NCBI RefSeq assembly: GCF_006345805.1
Contig: NC_042999.1
Span: 153,636,001 to 153,700,000, forward strand
Length of the DNA: 64,000 nt
Source: Octopus sinensis
Lineage: Eukaryota
Direction of reading: 5' to 3'
Below are positions 16,432 to 57,160 of the stretch, in pieces. A program made the position numbers and the translations under genes. The stretch's first letter is position 1. Every line of letters begins with the position of its first letter. Under the pieces are notes generated by a model. The model was not told the origin of the DNA and searched no databases. It was given only the letters and a program-made list of their open reading frames with translations.

Positions 16432-16782
16432 TGCTAGAGTGGCTGTGTGGTAAGTAGCTTGCTAACCAACCACTTGGTTTCGGGTTCAGTCCCACTGCTA
16501 TAGCCCCGGGCTGACCAATGCCTTGTGAGTGGATTTGGTAGACGGAAACTGAAAGAAGCCTGTCGTATATATGTATATATATGTATGTGTATGTGTTTGT
16601 CTCCCTAGCATTGCTTGACAACCGATGCTGGTGTGTTTACGTCCACGTCACTTAGCGGTTCGGCAAAAAGAGACCGATAGAATAAGTACTGGGCTTACAA
16701 AGAATAAGTCCCGCGGTCGATTTGCTCGACTAGAGGCGGTGCTTCAGCATGGCCGCAGTCAAATGACTGAAACATGTAAAGA

Positions 16783-16785
<3 letters not shown>
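16432..16785 (+). mobile_element. SINE family 1 with internal deletion in head
   Basis: Same head, body and tail motifs. Confidence 0.85.
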
Positions 16786-16828
<43 letters not shown>

Positions 16829-16849
16829 ATATATGTACATATATATTTT

Positions 16850-19800
16850 TTTATTTTTTATTTTATTTAGTTTCAGCTCACAAGCTGTGGCCATGCAGGG
16901 GCACCGCCATTTGGTGTTGCTACATGATTTTACTTCACGAATGCTTTTTAGCAATTGTCATTCGGTGCATGAGAGAGTTCGATGCAGCTGCCCTCATCTG
17001 CATCTCCTGCCGTGAAGTTGGTTCATCTGGGACACCTGACAAGAAGAGATCCAGTTTCATTTTAAAGACATCTGCATTCACCCCATGCAGGTCTCTTAGG
17101 TTCTTCGAGAGGATATTGAAGAGCTGTGGGCCTCGGAAGCCCAGGCTATCACGGTATCTTGTCCTACATCTTGATGGCAAATTTGGAGTCCTTGGCACTA
17201 TGCAGTGGCGCCCAGTTCTGGCATTTGTGTAACTCTCGATGCCAAAGTTTGGGACAAGTCCTTCTAGGATCTTCCAGATGTATATTATGGCATATCTTTC
17301 CCGCCTACGCTCTAAGGAATAGAGTCTCAATCTCTTGAGTCTTTCCCAATAGCTTATATTCTGCACAGAGGCCATCTTCTTCGTGTAGCTTCGTTGCATC
17401 GCCTCAAGTTCTGTGATTAACTTGACACTGGATGGTGACCATAGCTGAGAGCAATAGTCAAAGTGGCTTAGGACAAGTGTCCTCCAGAGGACCATCATGG
17501 TTTCCTGGTCTCTTGTTCTAAAGGTTCTAAGAATCCATCCGGTCAGCCGCCTACATTTCATTGCCAATTTAGCAACATACACATGAAAGGATACATCATC
17601 ACTCATGTAAATACCCAGGTCACACACTGATTGTGCCTCTGGGATTGCAATCCCTCCAGGTCCAGTGTATTTATTGGGTATTGCATTTAGTTTTGCATGC
17701 TGATAGTATAAAGCTTGAAACTTTTCAGCATTGAACTGCATGCTATTCTTTTCAGCCCACTTGTATATTTTTTCCAGCTCACATTGCAGGTGCTTAGTGT
17801 CTTCAGGGTTCTGTATTGTCTGTGAAACTTTTGTATCATCTGCATAACTTGTGATCGTGGCTCTCTGCGTGGCTGAGGGCATGTCTGAGAGGGCCATTAT
17901 GAACAGTAGTGGTTCCAGAACAGTGCCCTGCGGAACACCGCTCACTATCCTTCAGAAAGTCATGAAGCCATTCTCCCAATTTTCCAACTATGCCAAGATC
18001 ACGCAGTTTGTGACATATCATTCCATGATCGACTTTATCAAAGGCCTTTGCAAAGTCGAGATATATGACTTCCACATGTGAGTGGTTGAGCAGTCGTTTC
18101 AGCACCCAGTCATAGTGTTGTAGGAGCTGAGTTAAGCAGATTCTTCCTGGTCAGAAACCATGTTGGGTGTCAGGCAGCAAGTCATTTTCTTCAAGGAAGG
18201 TGATTAGTTTCCTTCTGACTATTGGTTCCATGACCTTGCTGATGTGTGAGGTCAGAGAGATAGGTCTGTAGTTCTTGGCCTCCGCTCTGCTACCTCCTTT
18301 ATGAATAGGGCATATTTTACCTTCCTTCAGTTTTCTTGGAAGTTTGCCAGTTGCAAGGAAGCTCTGAAAGAGGAACTGCAGTGGTCTTGCTAGGACTCTC
18401 TTACATACTTTTACAAGGATTGCTGGGAATCCATCGGGGCCAGTAGATGAGTTTGTTTTCATTTCATTAATAGCCTTTATTACATCGTCTTCCTTTATAT
18501 TGATGTAATCAATCATCGCTGCCTCTATTTTATATCTGCAGTGGTAAAGAAGTCAGTTGGATTGCTGACTTGAAAATGCCCTAGGGGTGGAGTGAAAATA
18601 CTCTTGAATTGCTCATTTAGTATTTCACTTACCCTCATTGGATTTCCGTGAGTGTGCCATCCTTTTCAAGGAGTGGCCCTATCCTACAGTGCACCGTAAC
18701 TCTTTCTTTGGAATACCTGTTAGAAAGCTCTGGGGTTAGATTTTATGTTGTCTATAGCCCAGGCTTCTTTGTCTGCTCTTTCTTTTTCAAGGGAGAGTTG
18801 CAAAATTTTTCAATTTCCAACAGTTTTATTTTCAGGCGGGACTTTTCACACTGCTTTCAATTTGTTTGTTTAGGCGATTTGAAACTTTTGTACGCCGTCT
18901 CATTAGAATTTTCCTCTCTCTGGGGGATTTGCTCTTGTGTACAGTGGCCTTTCTCTCTGGGACACATTTGTAGCATATGGCTTGCATTACAGACATGATT
19001 GTTGAAGTTTCATGTCGTGTCTGGCGAGGATAGACATTCAGGCCAGTTTTGTTGAGGATCTCTTTCTCAATTTGTTTCCAGTTTGCCTTATGGAAGTTCA
19101 AGCTGGAAAGATTTGAGAGTTTCTTGTAGGCTGCATGTCCATGCTTTCCTTTGGCCCGTACATGGTCAGCTCTGCCATGTTGTGATCCGAGTGTAGTGTC
19201 GGAGTCACTTTCACATTATGGATGAGATCCATATTATTTGTGAAGCAGAGATCCAGTATGTTACCTGCCCTGGTTGGTTGGAGTATTACTTGCTCCATGT
19301 ACAGAGTGTTGAAGAGGTTCAGGAGGGACCTCGCCTGTCCTCGTTCACATCGTGTCGTTCCTGGGAGAGAAAGGCCCTCGGGCCATCTGACATTGGGTAG
19401 ATTGAAGTCTCCCATAAGAAGTACACTTACGTGTTGTTCTAATGTGACTAGAACTTCTATTTTTATAAGGCAGTCTTCAAACTTGCCTACATGGCTTGGG
19501 GCATCTGGAGGGCGATATGTAGTACATATAACTACACCAAGTTGCCTTATATGTACAATTAGTGTGTCACACACCGAATTTGAGGATGACAAAAGGACCA
19601 GGGGTGTGAGGTCCTCACGAATGTACATAGCAACTCCTCCATGACTCCTTTCTTTTCTGTCGGTCCGTAGTACAACATACTGTGGTATGTGTATTTCCGC
19701 ATCTGCTATGTCCGTTTTCAGGTGGTTTCCGTAAGTGCTATGCATAAGGCTTGATTGCATGCAACAAGTCTCTTAAGACGGGATTTTTGTCCTATTACTG

Positions 19801-30204: not shown

Positions 30205-30632
30205 TTTCTACTGGAAGCACAAGCCCTCAAATTTGGGGGAAGGGATTAAATCAATTACATCGACCCAGTACGTAACTGGTACATGTTTAATCGACTCCAA
30301 AAGGATGAAAAACAAAGTCGACCTCGGCGGAATTTGAACGCAGATCGTAAAGACAGACGAAATACTGCTAAGCATTTCGCCCGGAGTGCTAACGTATCTT
30401 ATTTCTTTACTGACCGCAAGGGGCTAAACATAGAGGGGACAAACAAGGACAGATAAACGGATTAAGTCGATTACATCGACCCCAGTGCGTAACGGGTACT
30501 TAATTTATCGACCTCGAAAGGATGAAAGGCAAAGTTGACCTCGGCGGAATTTGAACGCAGAACGTAAAGACAGACGAAACACCGCTAAGTATTTCGCCCG
30601 GAGTGCTAACGTTTCTGCTGCTCGCCGCCTTA
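30205..30632 (-). mobile_element. SINE family 2 dimer (tail-A unit then tail-B unit)
   Basis: Two cores; junction aaagaaata-agatacgttagc. Confidence 0.85.
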
Positions 30633-31849: not shown

Positions 31850-32090
31850 GCCTGAGAGACTTACATGGTGTGGATGTGGGTTTCTTTAAAACTAAACTGG
31901 ATCTCTTCTTGTCGGGAGTCCCAGATGAACCTACCTCACGACAGGAGACGAAGATGCGGGCAGCAGCATCGAACTACCTTGTTGATCAAGTGCCACGTAT
32001 CAGAGGTGGATTCGCAAATTAGCGTAGCTCATTCAGCGGTGGTGCCCCAGCATGGCCGCGACCTTCGGGCTAAAACATTTTTAAGGATTT
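31850..32090 (+). mobile_element. CR1-group LINE 3' end
   Basis: DLHGVDVGFFKLKLDLFLSGVPDEP; tail ggtggtgccccagcatggccgc. Confidence 0.85.
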
Positions 32091-32119
32091 AAGGATATAT
32101 ATATATATATATAATATAC

Positions 32120-32284
<165 letters not shown>

Positions 32285-43391: not shown

Positions 43392-44240
43392 TGGCGGCGA
43401 GCTGGCAGAAACATTAGCACGCCGGGCGAAATGCGTAGCCGTATTTCATCTGCCGTTACGTTCTGGGTAGTAAAGAAATAGGTCTTTCGTCTGCCGCTAC
43501 TACGTTCTGAGTTCAAATTCCACCGAGGTCGACTTTGCCTTTTATCCTTTCGGGGTCGATTAAATAAGTACCAGTTACACACTGGGGTCGATATAATCGA
43601 CTTAATCCGTCTGTCTGCCCTTGTTTGTCCTCTCTGTATGTAGCCCCTTGAGAGCAGTAAAGAAATAGGTATTTCATCTGCCGCTACGTTCTGTGTTCAA
43701 ATTCCGCCGAGGTCAACTTTGCCTTTCATCTTTTCGGGGTCGATTAAGTAAGTACCAGTTACGCACTGGGGTCGATATAATCAACTTAATCCCTTTGTCT
43801 CCTTGTTTGTCCTCTTTGTGTTTAGCCACTTGTGGGTAGTAAAGGAATAGGTATTTCGTCTGCCGCTACGTTCTGAGTTCAAATTCCGTCGAGGTCGACT
43901 TTGCCTTTTATCCTTTCGGGGTCGAGAAATTAAGTACCAGTTTCGCACTGGGGTCGGTGTAATCGACTTAACCCGTTTGTCTATCCTTGTTTGTCCTCTC
44001 TATGTTTAGCTCCTTGTGGGTAGTAAAGAAATAAGAAACGTTAGCACGCCGGGCAAAAAAAATACTTAGCGGGATTTCATCTGTCTTTACGTTCCGAGTT
44101 CAAATTCCGCCAAGGTCGACAAGGCCTTTCATCCTTTCTGGGTCGATAAATTAAGTACCAGTTGCATACTGAGGTCGATCTAATCGACTGGAATCCTCCC
44201 CTAAAATTTCAGGCATTGTGCCTAGAGTAGAAAAGAATAT
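43392..44240 (+). mobile_element. SINE family 2 concatemer: head, three ~185-bp tail-A units, terminal tail-B unit
   Basis: Repeating core gaggtc(g/a)actttgccttt(c/t)atc...; junctions aaagaaata-ggt-atttc and aaagaaata-agaaacgttag. Confidence 0.9.
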
Positions 44241-48004: not shown

Positions 48005-48947
48005 ATACATTTCTTTATTGCCCACAGGGGTCTAAACATAGAGGGGACAAACAAAGAGATTAAGTCGATTACATCGACCTAGTGCGTAACTGGTACTTTA
48101 TTTATCGACCCCGAAATGCTGAAAGGCAAATTCAACCTCGGCGGAATTTGAACTCAGAACGTAGCGGCAGACGAAATACCTATTTCCTATTTCTTTACTA
48201 CCACAAGAGACTAAACACAGGCAAACAAGGAGAGACAAACGGAATAAGTCGATTACATCGACTTCAGTGTGTAACTGGTACTTAATTTATCGACTCCGAA
48301 AGGATGAAAGGCAAAGTCGAGCTCGGCAGAATTTGAACTCAGAACGAAATACCTATTTCTTTACTAACCACAAGGGGCTAAACACAGAGAGGACAAACAA
48401 GGACAGACAAACGGATTAAGTCGATTATATCGACTCCAGTGCGTAACTGGTACTTATTTAATCGACCCCGAAAGGATGAAAGGCAAAGTCGACCTCGGCG
48501 GAATTTGAACACAGAACGTAACGGCAGACGAAATACCTATTTCTTTACTGCTCACAAGGGGCTACACACAGCGAGGACAAATAAGGACAGACAAACGGAT
48601 TAAGTTGATTATATCAACCCCAGTGCGTAACTGGTACTTATTTTATCGACCCCGAAAGGATGAAAGGCAAAGTCGACCTCGGCGGAATTTGAACACAGAA
48701 CGTAACGGCAGATGAAATACCTATTTCTTTACTGCTCACAAGGGGCTACACACAGAGAGGACAAATAAGGACAGACAAACGGATTAAGTCGATTATATCA
48801 ACCCCAGTGCGTAACTGGTACTTATTTTATCGACATCGAAAGGATGAAAGGCAAAGTCGAGTCGGCGGAATTTGAACTCAGAACGTAGCGGCAGGTGAAA
48901 TACCCACTAAGCATTTCGCCCTGCGCGCTAACGTTTCTGCCAGCTCA
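48005..48947 (-). mobile_element. SINE family 2 pentamer, all tail-A units
   Basis: Five cores at ~185-bp period, one head at ~48945. Confidence 0.9.
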
Positions 48948-51719: not shown

Positions 51720-51819
51720 NNNNNNNNNNNNNNNNNNNNNNNNNNNNNNNNNNNNNNNNNNNNNNNNNNNNNNNNNNNNNNNNNNNNNNNNNNNNNNNNN
51801 NNNNNNNNNNNNNNNNNNN
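51720..51819. other. Assembly gap (100 N)
   Basis: Direct reading. Confidence 0.99.
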
Positions 51820-52293
<474 letters not shown>

Positions 52294-52359
52294 TGTATGT
52301 ATATCGTTTTTAGAAAACATAAATCCGAAAGAAAAAGCCCACTCTAAGATGTAGAGCAG

Positions 52360-52536
52360 TATATTAAAAATGGGGAATGCCGGTTTATAGGATTGCCTTA
52401 GGTTTCTCATCCATAAAGGGTTTAGCTTTATGGCGTATCAGGTTTTTGGGATCTGACGATATGCCATAAAGCTAAAATCTTTATGGAGGAAAACCTAAGG
52501 CAACCCCATAAACAGGCCTTCACCACTTTTAATATA
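52360..52536. repeat. MITE-like hairpin, ~78-bp imperfect arms
   Basis: tatattaaaaatgg...ttgccttaggttt...gctttatggcgtatc / gatatgccataaagc...aaacctaaggcaa...ccacttttaatata. Confidence 0.75.
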
Positions 52537-52542
52537 TACATT

Positions 52543-52623
52543 CTAAAATTAGAATGATACAAAGAAGATTAGCATGGTCCCTGCGCAAGGATGACACGCA
52601 AATTCATGGAGCATCCCATATTT
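52543..52623 (+). pseudogene. RNU6: U6 snRNA pseudogene (5' stem-loop missing)
   Basis: ctaaaattagaatgatacaaagaagattagcatggtccctgcgcaaggatgacacgcaaattcatggagcatcccatattt; about 8 mismatches in 81 nt vs the U6 sequence I recall; ACAGAGA box mutated to ACAAAGA. Confidence 0.92.
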
Positions 52624-52626
52624 ACT

Positions 52627-53955
52627 AAGCTGAGCAAATGCCAAAAATTATAGGCCTATATCTCTGACTTCAAACATCAGCAAAGTCATGGAACGGATAG
52701 TCAGAGGGAAAATAATCGCATTCCTTAAAGAAAACGACTTGCTAAGTGATATCCAGTATGACTCGCGACCAGGTAGGAGCTGCCTGACCCAGCTCTTACA
52801 ACACTATGACTGGGTGTTGACGCAGTTATTCAACAACTCACATGTAGACTTAATATACCTTGACTTTACAAAAGCTTTTCACAAAGTGGATCATGGGATG
52901 ATATGCCACAAACTGCGTGATCTCGGCATAGTTGGAAAACTTGGAGAATGTTTACATGACTTTCAGAAAGATAGAAGTCAGGCAGTAGTGGCCAATGAGG
53001 ACACCTCAAAGAAAATACAAACAGTGAGTAGTATTCCACAGGGCACTGTCTTGGGACTACTACTTTTCATAGTAGCCCTCTTATATATGCCCTCAGCTGC
53101 TCGAATAACAACCCTTGCTAGCTATGCAGACGATACGAACGTCTCGCAGAAAATACAGAACCCCAGCGATGTTGCACACCTGTAACAGGAGTTGGACTCA
53201 ATTTACAGATGGGCTGTGGACATTAATATTCAGTTTAATACTGAAAAATTCCAAACTCTGCGCTACCAGCGTCCAAAACTGAACGAAAAACTTACAGGGT
53301 ACTCTGGCCCACAGAGAATTACAATCCCAGAGCCCAAATTAGTGCGTGATCTGGGTACCGACATGAGTGTCGATACCTCTTTCCAAGGGCACATTACCAG
53401 GATGGCAACAAAGTGCAGACGACTGGCTGGATGGATCTTGAGAACGTTCAGAACCAGAAAGAAGGAAATCATGATGGTCCTCTGGAGGACATTCGTCTTC
53501 AGCTTCCTGGATTATTGCTCCCAACTATGGTCACCCCACAGTGTGAAATTAACAGCTGACCTTGAAGCAATCCAGCGAAGATTCACAAAGATCGTCTCAT
53601 TGCAATATCTCAGCTACTGGGATAGTCTAAAAGCGCTATGATTTTACCTCCTGGAGCGAAGGCGGGAGAGATATTCAGTAATATACATCTGGAAGATCTT
53701 GGAAGGGATTGTGCCAAATTTCGGCATTGAAAGCTACACAAATACCAGAACGGGTCGCCACTGCACAGTGCCAAAGATCCCAGCAATGCCATCGCGCTTC
53801 AGGATCAGATACTGCAACAGCCTGAGTTTCAGGGGCCCACAACTTTTTAATATTCTCCCAAAGAGCCAGAGAGACCTACACAAAGTGGATGTAGGTGTTT
53901 TCAAATCAAAACTATATCTCTTCCTGTCGCGAGTCCCAGATGAACCTACCTCCGA
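52627..53955 (+). mobile_element. 5'-truncated CR1-group LINE (RT plus C-terminus), degenerate
   Basis: AKNYRPISLTSNISKVME, YLDFTKAFHKVDH, SIPQGTVLG, YADDT, YCSQLWSP. Confidence 0.92.
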
Positions 53956-54099
53956 ATTTGTTATAATAACCAGAATAATATTTTTTTCAGATATATTTGC
54001 TAGTATTGCGAGTGGTATTTAAATCAGGCAAATCTTCATATTGGTAGTACATGAAAGTGAACGTTGTTGTTTGTTTGAAGTCCAGACCGAAAGTAAAGT

Positions 54100-54260
54100 T
54101 GTTATTGAATGGTACGAGGAACATTCTAGTGAAGTTGAACATTTTATCTGACCACCACAGTCTCCAGATCTCAATATTATTAAACATTTATGGTACATTT
54201 TAGAAAAACAAGTAAGGAGTCGATATCCTTCACCATCATCACTACAAGAACTAGAGACAG
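54100..54260 (+). mobile_element. Tc1/mariner transposase C-terminal fragment
   Basis: WYEEHSSEVEHFI.PPQSPDLNIIKHLWYILEKQVRSR...SLQEL. Confidence 0.75.
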
Positions 54261-56020: not shown

Positions 56021-56934
56021 ATCATGAGATATTTGACAGATTAAATTTGACAGGGAAATTTCAGTTCTATAAAAACTAATAAAATATTAGACGCCTGTAT
56101 GCTGTCATGTATTAGGATCTCTGTAGATCATTGCAATTAATAGGCAGAAGTAAACTATGACAACATTAGATATATAACAGCTTTATAATGGTTACAAATT
56201 AGATAAGTTTACTGTCTCCAAGTTTATTCATTGCTTGTATTTTTGGTTTTAGTGATTGATTAGAGAGACGAGCTTAAATTGTGGTTGGCAAATGATGGCT
56301 AATTAAAATTCATCTCTATAAATTAACCATTTCATAATAATAATTTCAACTTATGGTAATGTTATTTTGCTCCTACGTCTCCTACTAATGATTTCAAACA
56401 TCCCCTATATACTTAGGAAGTGATGTATCCTTTACAAAACACAGACCATCTCATGTGCTATTTTGATTTCCAATGATTAAAGATACGGGACAATCTTTGG
56501 TCCTGATGATGCATATTTCAATTGAATTTCATATTCGAATTTAGAGATGTGACAAATGCTATACTAAAAAAAAAAGGCCACTTTGAATTAATTTTTTTAA
56601 TTAATCGTGTTACTATTAATTGTTTAATTCCATTTTACCAATTTCGATGGAACAAACCCTATCGTGAAATGCACTCCACGTGACCATCCTATTTTTTGAT
56701 ATCTATGACCACGTTAAGTATCCTATAGTCATTTTTAATTGTCCATTTTTAACAAACAGGAAAAATAATTGTTAAGAAACTCGTTTTCAACCAGATGGTT
56801 TCGGGTTGAGGCACCACTGAGCGGCACCTTGAAAAAGTATCTTCTGATATAACCCCAAACTAACCAATACTTCCTGAGTGAATTTCGTTAACAGAAAGTG
56901 TGTGGGAGCTCATAATATATATGTATGAAGGCGG

Positions 56935-57160
56935 CGAGCTGGCAGAAACGTTAGCACGCCGGGCGAAATTCGTAGCCGTATTTCGTCTGTCGTTGCGTTC
57001 CGAGTTCAAATTCCGCCGAGGTCGACTTTGCCTTTCATCCTTTCGGGGTCGATAAATTAAGTACCAGTTACGCACTGGGGTCGATGTAAACGACTTAATC
57101 CCTTTGTCTGTCCTTGTTTGTCCCCTCTGTGTTTAGCCCCTTGTGGGTAGTAAAGAAATA

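What the first reader, a model, noticed from the sequence alone, without database searches (positions are those of the whole stretch)
52543..53955. U6 snRNA-CR1 LINE chimera
Seen: the U6 3' end (..ccatattt, 52623) is followed within ~3 nt by CR1 RT coding sequence (S*ANAKNYRPISLT), in the same orientation. Known: U6/L1 chimeras in mammals arise by RNA ligation or template switching, and are rarely described for CR1-type LINEs or molluscs. Inference: a fossil chimeric retrotranscript.
Basis: partly seen in the sequence, partly recalled or inferred. Interest (0 to 1): 0.7.

Follow-up and report, generated by a model that had tools for sequence, protein, structure and literature searches.

The report
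Degraded U6–LINE chimeric retrocopy in octopus
A decayed copy of the U6 spliceosomal RNA is fused head-to-tail to a fragment of a LINE retrotransposon, most likely because the LINE's reverse transcriptase copied both RNAs in one event; this genome holds dozens of clearer fusions of the same kind, and the phenomenon is already known from vertebrates.

Summary
U6 nt 22-105 lie at 52540-52623 (76/84 identical, all 8 changes transitions). Three filler bases (ACT) follow. A LINE ORF2 fragment in the same orientation runs 52627-53952 (RVT_1, E=3e-18). The junction is unique in the genome. Both parts are equally diverged (U6 9.5%, LINE 9.3% from its family consensus).

The chimera reading is plausible but the locus lacks the classical proofs. 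The U6 lacks its first ~17-21 nt. The LINE lacks its last 139 nt (33 codons plus 3'UTR and tail). No target-site duplication is left.

Genome context supports the reading. An exact pattern finds 42 places where a U6 3' end is followed within 61 nt by the conserved LINE/SINE 3'UTR core, against 0 in the control. Of 10 dispersed high-scoring U6 loci I could read, 8 are U6 fused to a LINE tail or a SINE at differing junctions. Two have TSDs of 11-18 bp and two sit in (TA)n, all in TA-rich DNA like the window's 5' flank.

Verdict: probably (~0.7) an old single-event U6-LINE retrocopy that later lost its 3' end. U6 chimeras with L2, RTE and tentatively CR1 elements are published for vertebrates. 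This is a new member of a known kind. CR1 clade assignment was not tested.

The parts
52292..52538 (.). Foldback repeat of about 250 bp (arms 52360-52439 / 52458-52536). It is flanked by microsatellites and forms the 5' flank, and probably the TA-rich target, of the chimera.
   Evidence: There are 94 genome matches, most ending at window 52538-52541. In the alignment of 6 copies the element ends ...CCCCATTTTTAATATATA and is followed by (TA)n or (CA)n in the other copies. The inverted arms are 86-87% complementary.
52540..52623 (+). U6 snRNA pseudogene fragment, U6 nt 22-105 (possibly from 52537 = nt 17). It has no 5' stem-loop and no promoter. The ACAGAGA box is mutated to ACAAAGA, and the T-run is cut to TTT.
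   Evidence: Rfam RF00026 scores 80.3 bits, E=8.7e-19. It is 76/84 identical to the genome's tandem-array U6 variant. All 8 changes are transitions, 3 of them at CpG. No copy of U6 nt 1-23 with up to 5 edits lies in 50-56 kb.
52624..52626 (+). Filler ACT between the U6 3' end and the LINE. It matches neither the U6 T-run nor the LINE consensus (GGG) at that place.
   Evidence: Shown by the alignment of the junction with 29 LINE copies. Similar 1-4 nt fillers are seen in the other U6 chimeras of this genome.
52627..53952 (+). LINE ORF2 fragment, from the start of the RT domain to 33 codons before the stop, truncated at both ends. It keeps one reading frame with two stop codons.
   Evidence: RVT_1 at E=3.3e-18. 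It is about 84% identical over the full 1326 bp to many copies and differs by 9.3% from the consensus of 28 copies. Other copies continue upstream. They also continue downstream for 139 nt to ...GAGCTGAAACTA plus an A-rich/(TA)n tail, and 24 of 29 reach that terminus.
53953..54093 (.). 3' flank that is neither LINE sequence nor a repeat among the best genome matches. The LINE's 3' end, tail and any 3' TSD should have been here.
   Evidence: There is no similarity to the missing LINE tail (shuffle p=0.68). The tail is not found elsewhere near the locus. Only 54094-54258 of this flank is repetitive. No TSD with the 5' flank.
54094..54258 (+). Fragment of a Tc1/mariner-like transposase gene. It is context only and not part of the chimera.
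   Evidence: It is 93-95% identical to at least 40 genome copies, with 2114 first-look candidates. It gives a weak DDE_3 hit, E=7.7e-5, below the Pfam cut-off.

Best explanation
The locus is an old chimeric retrocopy made in one target-primed reverse transcription event by a LINE with a specific 3'UTR and a microsatellite tail (CR1/L2-like). The proposed steps are these.
1. The LINE endonuclease nicked TA-rich DNA at the end of a foldback repeat.
2. Reverse transcription started on the LINE RNA's 3' tail and ran about 1.47 kb up to the start of the RT-coding region.
3. It added 3 non-templated bases and continued on the 3' end of a U6 snRNA. Alternatively it copied a U6-LINE RNA that had already been ligated.
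4. It stopped at the base of the U6 5' stem-loop (nt ~17-22), where the cDNA was joined to the (TA)-rich target.
5. Later a deletion or rearrangement removed the last 139 nt of the LINE, its tail and the 3' TSD.

Shown: the anatomy, the equal age of the two parts, the uniqueness of the junction, and the recurrence of U6-LINE/SINE chimeras in this genome. Inferred: the single event, template switch versus ligation, and the later 3' loss. The copy is non-functional.
For: - A complete U6 3' end is fused to a 5'-truncated LINE in the same orientation, 3 nt apart.
- The parts are equally diverged: U6 8/84 = 9.5% (CI 4-18%), LINE 123/1326 = 9.3%, Fisher p=0.85.
- The junction is single-copy in the genome, so it is not a repeat-family feature.
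- The process recurs in this genome. A U6 3' end followed within 61 nt by the LINE/SINE 3'UTR core occurs 42 times against 0 in the control. At least 9 of these coincide with independently found U6 hits.
- Of the 10 dispersed U6 loci held, all 8 that lack a TATA box at -30 are U6 fused within a few nt to a LINE tail or a SINE. There are at least 3 partner families and several junction points.
- L004 has an 18-bp TSD and L008 an 11-bp TSD. L002 and L029 lie in (TA)n.
- All those insertion sites are TA-rich. So is the window's 5' flank, TTTTAATATATA, at the end of a repeat whose other copies are followed by (TA)n.
- No short LINE tail follows the window's U6. With a LINE that depends on its own 3'UTR, the adjacent LINE fragment is therefore the only candidate for the tail that carried it.
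- Loss of the 3' end is not rare at this age: 5 of 29 family copies lack part of the last 139 nt.
- 5'-truncated U6 is the rule in the published platypus U6-L2 chimeras (PMC4476161, section 10).
Against: - There is no TSD.
- The LINE part lacks the 3' end that TPRT needs, so an extra, unobserved deletion must be assumed.
- The U6 is 5'-truncated, while the 8 clear chimeras I could read carry full-length U6.
- All other chimeras found have short partners: 45-60 nt LINE tails or SINEs of 170 nt or less. No second case with a junction deep in ORF2 was found. The exact-match search for LINE tails of about 95-155 nt gave none.
- With at least 365 U6 copies in a repeat-rich 2.7-Gb genome, about one chance abutment of a U6 end and a LINE fragment could exist genome-wide (my rough estimate).
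- The orthologous site was not seen.
Confidence: 0.7

Rival explanations
1. Independent events. A U6 pseudogene fragment and a LINE fragment came to lie next to each other by separate insertions and/or a deletion. For example, a 5'-truncated LINE inserted at the T-run of an older U6 copy, or a deletion joined the two. They were never one RNA or cDNA.
For: - All three outer hallmarks of a single event are missing: TSD, LINE 3' end and full-length U6.
- The neighbourhood is a patchwork of truncated repeats: a foldback element, a 165-bp mariner piece and an assembly gap at 51720-51819. At least one rearrangement has therefore hit this locus.
- There are at least 365 U6 copies in the genome, so one chance abutment genome-wide is conceivable.
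Against: - It needs a breakpoint within 3 nt of the exact U6 3' end and the same orientation.
- The two parts are of equal age.
- A solitary U6 retrocopy made by a 3'UTR-dependent LINE should carry a LINE or SINE tail, as all 8 readable retrocopies do. None is present between the U6 and the RT-coding sequence.
- No upstream half of the LINE is nearby.
Confidence: 0.17
2. Capture at a DNA break. A chimeric U6-LINE cDNA, or two cDNA pieces, was used as filler in double-strand-break repair, as in endonuclease-independent LINE insertion. That would give in one step a LINE truncated at both ends, a truncated U6 and no TSD.
For: - It explains the 3'-truncated LINE, the 5'-truncated U6 and the absent TSD without a later deletion.
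- 3'-truncated, TSD-less insertions are the known signature of endonuclease-independent L1 insertion in mammals. This rests on my own knowledge and was not checked here.
Against: - There is no direct evidence, and the pathway has not been described for this LINE type.
- The TA-rich 5' flank fits the normal endonuclease target of the family.
- 17% of ordinary family copies have also lost their 3' end, so a later loss is a sufficient explanation.
Confidence: 0.1
3. Assembly artefact. The junction was created by mis-joining reads in a repeat-rich region.
For: A 100-N gap lies 0.7 kb upstream (51720-51819), and the region is full of repeats.
Against: The junction has a biologically meaningful form: an exact U6 3' end, the same strand and equal divergence. 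The sequence is continuous for 1.4 kb with an unbroken reading frame.
Confidence: 0.03

Closest known systems
U6/L1 chimeric retropseudogenes of mammals (Group IV of Doucet et al. 2015, PMC4476161; RNA-ligation model of Moldovan et al. 2019, PMC6789731)
   Same: The U6 3' end is fused directly to a 5'-truncated LINE in the same orientation. A few odd bases sit at the junction, and the LINE breakpoint is variable.
   Different: The mammalian cases have full-length U6, an L1 part that reaches its poly(A), and 7-20 bp TSDs at a TTTT/A site. Here the U6 is 5'-truncated, the LINE is not an L1 (no poly(A); specific 3'UTR plus microsatellite tail), its 3' end is missing, and there is no TSD.
U6-L2 chimeras of platypus, and U6-L2, U6-RTE and tentative U6-CR1 chimeras of Anolis, opossum and turkey (PMC4476161, section 10)
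   Same: The partner is a 'stringent' LINE that depends on its 3'UTR. The U6 is usually 5'-truncated, TSDs are tiny or absent, and SINE partners also occur. The genome-wide set found here resembles the platypus set of 40.
   Different: Those carry short LINE 3' segments that reach the element's end. The window's LINE part is long (at least 1.3 kb, breakpoint in the RT domain) and lacks the end. The host is a cephalopod, not a vertebrate. The other octopus chimeras carry full-length U6.
Bi- and tripartite template-switch pseudogenes (Magnaporthe MGL LINE, PMC2104539)
   Same: LINE reverse transcription fuses copies of unrelated RNAs head-to-tail.
   Different: The RNAs and the host differ. I did not show that the upstream foldback repeat is a third RNA-derived part. 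It looks like a DNA-type foldback element.
SINEs with snRNA-derived heads and LINE-derived tails (SINEU; from my own knowledge, not checked here)
   Same: An snRNA sequence is joined to a LINE 3' tail. The short U6+tail copies in this genome have that layout.
   Different: SINEU heads derive from U1 or U2, and the families amplify from master copies. Here the junctions, fillers and partner families differ between copies. That argues for repeated independent events. The window's junction is single-copy.

Membership tests
U6 spliceosomal snRNA (RF00026), functional gene | Score above the Rfam gathering threshold | tested here: met
   80.3 bits against 44, E=8.7e-19.
U6 spliceosomal snRNA (RF00026), functional gene | 5' stem-loop (nt 1-19) present | tested here: not met
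   Homology starts at nt 17-22. No copy of nt 1-23 with up to 5 edits lies in 50-56 kb.
U6 spliceosomal snRNA (RF00026), functional gene | Intact ACAGAGA box, upstream TATA at -30, and a terminator of at least 4 T | tested here: not met
   The box reads ACAAAGA (nt 44 G>A). The upstream sequence is the foldback repeat, not the TATA-bearing flank of the real genes L001, L006 and L009-28. The T-run is TTT followed by ACT. It is therefore a pseudogene.
U6-LINE chimeric retropseudogene (single TPRT event) | U6 3' end joined to a 5'-truncated LINE on the same strand, with at most a few filler bases | tested here: met
   U6 ends at 52623 and the LINE starts at 52627, both on the + strand.
U6-LINE chimeric retropseudogene (single TPRT event) | The LINE part runs to the element's own 3' end and tail | tested here: not met
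   The last 139 nt plus tail are missing and are not nearby.
U6-LINE chimeric retropseudogene (single TPRT event) | A target-site duplication flanks the whole unit | tested here: not met
   The best direct repeat between the flanks is no better than shuffles (p=0.5). The 3' flank is probably not the original one.
U6-LINE chimeric retropseudogene (single TPRT event) | Both parts are of the same age | tested here: met
   9.5% against 9.3%, Fisher p=0.85. The U6 interval is wide (4-18%).
U6-LINE chimeric retropseudogene (single TPRT event) | Recurrence in the same genome with differing junction points | tested here: met
   42 exact-pattern hits against 0 in the control. Eight of 10 dispersed loci read are chimeras with at least 3 partner families. 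There are further SINE junction points and TSDs in L004 and L008. No second junction inside ORF2 was found.
U6-LINE chimeric retropseudogene (single TPRT event) | Empty orthologous site in a related species | not testable with these tools
   No related eukaryotic genome is reachable. An exact-protein look-up found nothing.
CR1-clade LINE | Reverse transcriptase domain of a non-LTR element | tested here: met
   RVT_1 at E=3.3e-18. There are 3656 homologues, and some carry Exo_endo_phos_2 (PF14529).
CR1-clade LINE | A specific 3'UTR followed by a short or microsatellite tail rather than poly(A) | tested here: met
   The family ends ...GGCGGTGCCCCAGCATGGCCACAGCTCTGAGCTGAAACTA plus an A-rich/(TA)n tail. 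L2 and other clades share this feature.
CR1-clade LINE | Placement of the RT inside the CR1 clade in a phylogeny with reference elements | not tested
   No reference LINE set was on hand, and source names are only 'hypothetical protein'. I therefore write 'CR1/L2-like'.

The most novel reading that the evidence does not exclude
The window's fossil would be the oldest trace of a long-running, still active process in octopods, in which Pol III transcripts ending in oligo-U are joined to LINE RNA. The preferred joining site lies just 5' of the conserved 3'UTR core. In most of the 42 hits the U6 T-run is followed by AAATGGCGGTGCCCC. A tRNA-like SINE in L008 shows the same body-to-tail junction, ...CATTTATTTT|AAATGGTGGTGCCCC. 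If so, this would be the mechanism by which cephalopod SINEs acquire their LINE tails, observed 'in the act'. U6+tail copies might even behave as a U6-headed SINE.
Probability: 0.2. Interest if true: 0.55.

Novelty: new member of a known kind. Interest (0 to 1): 0.35.

Why it matters
The locus itself is a dead pseudogene with no function. Its value is as a marker. Together with the dozens of clearer U6-LINE-tail and U6-SINE fusions found in the same genome, it shows that template switching (or RNA ligation) onto U6 by LINE reverse transcriptases also operates in a protostome. So far this has been documented only in vertebrates and, for other RNAs, in fungi. The window copy is about 10% diverged, while some other copies are identical to the gene, so the process has run for a long time. 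Cephalopod genomes are dominated by SINE and LINE expansions. These chimeras give a direct handle on which LINE families are or were active, what their target sites are ((TA)-rich DNA), and how SINEs pick up LINE tails.

Tried and rejected
1. The foldback repeat split a full U6. Rejected: no U6 5' part lies upstream of it or anywhere in 50-56 kb.
2. The rest of the LINE sits further up- or downstream, as in a nested insertion. Rejected: neither the 5' continuation nor the 139-nt tail is near the locus, and the 3' flank is not a diverged tail.
3. The U6-LINE junction belongs to a repeat family or SINE. Rejected: it is single-copy.
4. TSD search between the flanks gave nothing.
5. The 6-nt match TCCATA, shared by the U6 end and the LINE 10 nt upstream of the breakpoint, is not at the junction. 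I estimate a ~6% chance of such a match, so I dropped it.
6. Census of the 12 dispersed U6 pseudogenes. I did not try to read flanks another way. I used only hypothesis-specific pattern counts and the loci already held.
7. Orthologue look-up by exact protein found nothing on record.
8. Naming the LINE clade from database names failed, because all names are uninformative.
9. Literature on U6 chimeras in molluscs or cephalopods: none found.

Full report
**What is in the sequence**

Rfam finds a single family in the 64-kb window: U6 at 52527-52625 (+), 80.3 bits, E=8.7e-19. That alignment is forced to full length.
- Compared with the genome's own U6 genes, homology covers U6 nt 22-105 = 52540-52623, 76/84 identical. 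It may begin at 52537 (nt 17) if one AT unit was lost by slippage.
- The variant (ATTCTAAAATT) matches the U6 of a large tandem array on contig C1.
- All 8 differences are transitions, 3 at CpG. One destroys the ACAGAGA box.
- The 5' stem-loop is absent from the locus. There is no promoter, and the terminator is reduced to TTT. It is a pseudogene fragment.

Three bases (ACT, 52624-52626) follow the U6. Homology to an abundant LINE family then starts at 52627 on the same strand.
- The LINE piece runs to 53952.
- It keeps one reading frame with two stop codons.
- It carries an RVT_1 domain, E=3.3e-18.

**What the LINE fragment lacks**

Other copies continue upstream of 52627 with more ORF2 (...ICPIHKGG|SRADAKNYRPISL), so the fragment is 5'-truncated. 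That is expected for a chimera.

Other copies also continue downstream of 53952 for 139 nt. That stretch holds 33 more codons, a stop, and a 3'UTR ending ...GGCGGTGCCCCAGCATGGCCACAGCTCTGAGCTGAAACTA, followed by an A-rich/(TA)n tail. Of 29 copies, 24 reach that terminus. The window copy does not.
- The missing tail is nowhere nearby.
- The 3' flank is not a decayed tail.
- No target-site duplication links the flanks.

The three classical proofs of a single retrotransposition event are therefore absent here: TSD, LINE 3' end and full-length U6.

**Surroundings**

- Upstream, 52292-52538 is a ~250-bp foldback repeat with many genomic copies. In those copies it is bordered by microsatellites and ends ...TTTTTAATATATA followed by (TA)n or (CA)n. 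The U6 fragment starts exactly there.
- Downstream, 53953-54093 is not among the repeats found.
- 54094-54258 is a young fragment of a mariner-like transposase gene.
- A 100-N assembly gap lies at 51720-51819.

**Age test**

Against a majority consensus of 28 family copies, the LINE fragment differs at 123/1326 sites, or 9.3%. The U6 differs at 8/84, or 9.5% (95% CI 4.2-17.9%). Fisher p=0.85. The short U6 makes this a weak test.

**Uniqueness**

The junction occurs once in the 2.72-Gb genome. The U6 fragment's best other matches are 89-93% identical and stop at the U6 3' end. It is not part of a repeat family.

**Genome-wide check**

- The genome has at least 365 copies of the U6 core with up to 3 mismatches.
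- An exact pattern, U6 3' end (TTCCATATTT) followed within 61 nt by the conserved core of the LINE/SINE 3'UTR (CCCAGCATGGCC), gives 42 hits. The reversed control gives 0.
- At least 9 of those hits coincide with U6 hits found independently.
- The junctions cluster just 5' of GGCGGTGCCCC, but T-run lengths and fillers differ. At least three tail types occur: AAATGGCGG..., CAGCGGTGGTG... (a second LINE family, also present at window 32046) and CAAGGGCGG....

I could read 10 dispersed high-scoring U6 loci, besides the tandem array.
- L001 and L006 have a TATA box at -30 and look like genes.
- L002, L004 and L007 are full-length U6 plus the last 45-60 nt of a LINE or SINE tail.
- L003 and L005 are U6 plus a 5'-truncated SINE.
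- L008, L029 and L030 are U6 plus a full-length tRNA-like SINE.

L004 is flanked by an 18-bp TSD (TATATATGCATATATATA / TATATATGCATGTGTATA) and L008 by an 11-bp one. L002 and L029 lie in (TA)n. A further pattern finds more SINE junction points, on C8 and C21.

U6 fusion to LINE or SINE RNA is thus common here, has variable junctions and TA-rich targets, and is partly very recent, since some U6 parts are identical to the gene. No second case with a breakpoint deep inside ORF2 was found. Exact-match hits for LINE tails of about 95-155 nt were nil.

**Interpretation**

In this genome every readable U6 copy that is not a gene carries its LINE or SINE partner directly after the T-run. The window's U6 has no short tail, only the RT-coding LINE fragment on the same strand and of the same age, with a filler like those of the other chimeras. 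Its 5' flank is the TA-rich kind of site the family uses.

The simplest account is one TPRT event. The reverse transcriptase copied about 1.47 kb of LINE RNA, moved onto U6 (or copied a pre-ligated RNA), and stopped at the base of the U6 5' stem-loop. A later loss removed the LINE 3' end. About 17% of ordinary copies of this family have suffered such a loss. I put this at about 0.7.

The rivals are independent juxtaposition (0.17), capture of cDNA at a DNA break, which would explain all truncations at once (0.10), and misassembly (0.03).

**Comparison with what is known**

U6/L1 chimeras are classical in mammals (PMC4476161, PMC6789731). Doucet et al. 2015, section 10, already extend them to 'stringent' LINEs.
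- Platypus has 40 U6-L2 chimeras, mostly with 5'-truncated U6 and TSDs of 1-9 bp.
- Anolis has U6-L2, U6-RTE and U6-L1 chimeras.
- Opossum has two tentative U6 chimeras, one with an RTE element and one with an RTE-dependent SINE (RTESINE1), neither with an obvious TSD.
- Turkey has one unresolved 5'-truncated U6-CR1.

My library searches found nothing for molluscs or cephalopods. The closest protein relatives of the LINE are from the octopod Argonauta hians. The CR1 clade label was not tested, so I call the element CR1/L2-like on the basis of its RT and its 3'UTR-plus-microsatellite tail.

**Verdict**

The finding is a new member of a known kind in a new host phylum. The single locus is of low interest. 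The genome-wide set, with its junction hot spot next to the 3'UTR core, is the more useful lead.

Noticed in passing
G000 genome-wide; examples L002, L004, L007 (U6 at locus positions ~1501-1607); 42 places listed: Dozens of full-length U6 copies are fused after their T-run to the last 45-60 nt of LINE or SINE 3' tails. The junctions cluster just 5' of GGCGGTGCCCCAGCATGGCC, while fillers, T-run lengths and tail families vary. L004 has an 18-bp TSD. Many of the best-scoring Rfam 'U6 genes' of this genome are therefore retrocopies.
   Followed up: partly
L003, L005, L008, L029/L030; also C8:20126775 and C21:4630503: These are U6-SINE chimeras. In L008 and L029/30 the U6 is followed by a full-length tRNA-like SINE, with an 11-bp TSD in L008. 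Elsewhere the U6 is followed by a second SINE truncated at different internal points. L003 and L005 share almost the same junction and a diagnostic base, so they could be copies of one composite element.
   Followed up: partly
L008, about 430-500 nt downstream of its U6: A tRNA-like SINE joins its body to the LINE-derived tail at ...CATTTATTTT|AAATGGTGGTGCCCCAGC. This is the same kind of junction (a T-run, then AAATGG...) as in the U6 chimeras. It hints that SINE tails here were acquired by the same process.
   Followed up: no
G000:C14:7253087-7253296: There are three tandem units of about 87 bp. Each consists of a U6 3' end plus a LINE tail.
   Followed up: no
G000:C1:141834633-141960814: A tandem array holds at least 35 near-identical U6 genes spaced 1.1-1.4 kb apart, each with a TATA box at about -30. 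The window's U6 fragment carries this array's sequence variant.
   Followed up: partly
window 52292-52538: A ~250-bp foldback repeat (60-nt left part plus an 80-nt inverted-repeat pair) has many copies. They are regularly bordered on both sides by (TA)n, (CA)n or (TG)n microsatellites. Its class is unknown.
   Followed up: partly
window 4858, 6962, 12497, 14002, 16735-16912, 25099, 32037, 60745, 63355: The conserved 3'UTR core of the LINE (GGCGGTGCCCCAGCATGGCCACAGC) recurs at many places in the window. These are presumably the tails of SINEs and related LINEs. Related LINE copies lie at about 16745-19300 and 31870-32271.
   Followed up: no
window 54094-54258: A 165-bp fragment of a Tc1/mariner-like transposase gene is 93-95% identical to at least 40 genome copies, with about 2100 first-look candidates. 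It is a young, very abundant DNA-transposon family.
   Followed up: no
window 48010-48943, 43393-44196, 30243-30630, 56917-57158 and others: A repeat unit of about 180 bp occurs in tandem and dispersed across the window. It was seen through a flank of locus L066.
   Followed up: no
window 51720-51819 and 52025-52302: A 100-N assembly gap lies 0.7 kb upstream of the finding. A T27 run and a (TATC)n/(TC)n/(TA)n/(TATG)n microsatellite block lie directly upstream of the foldback repeat.
   Followed up: no
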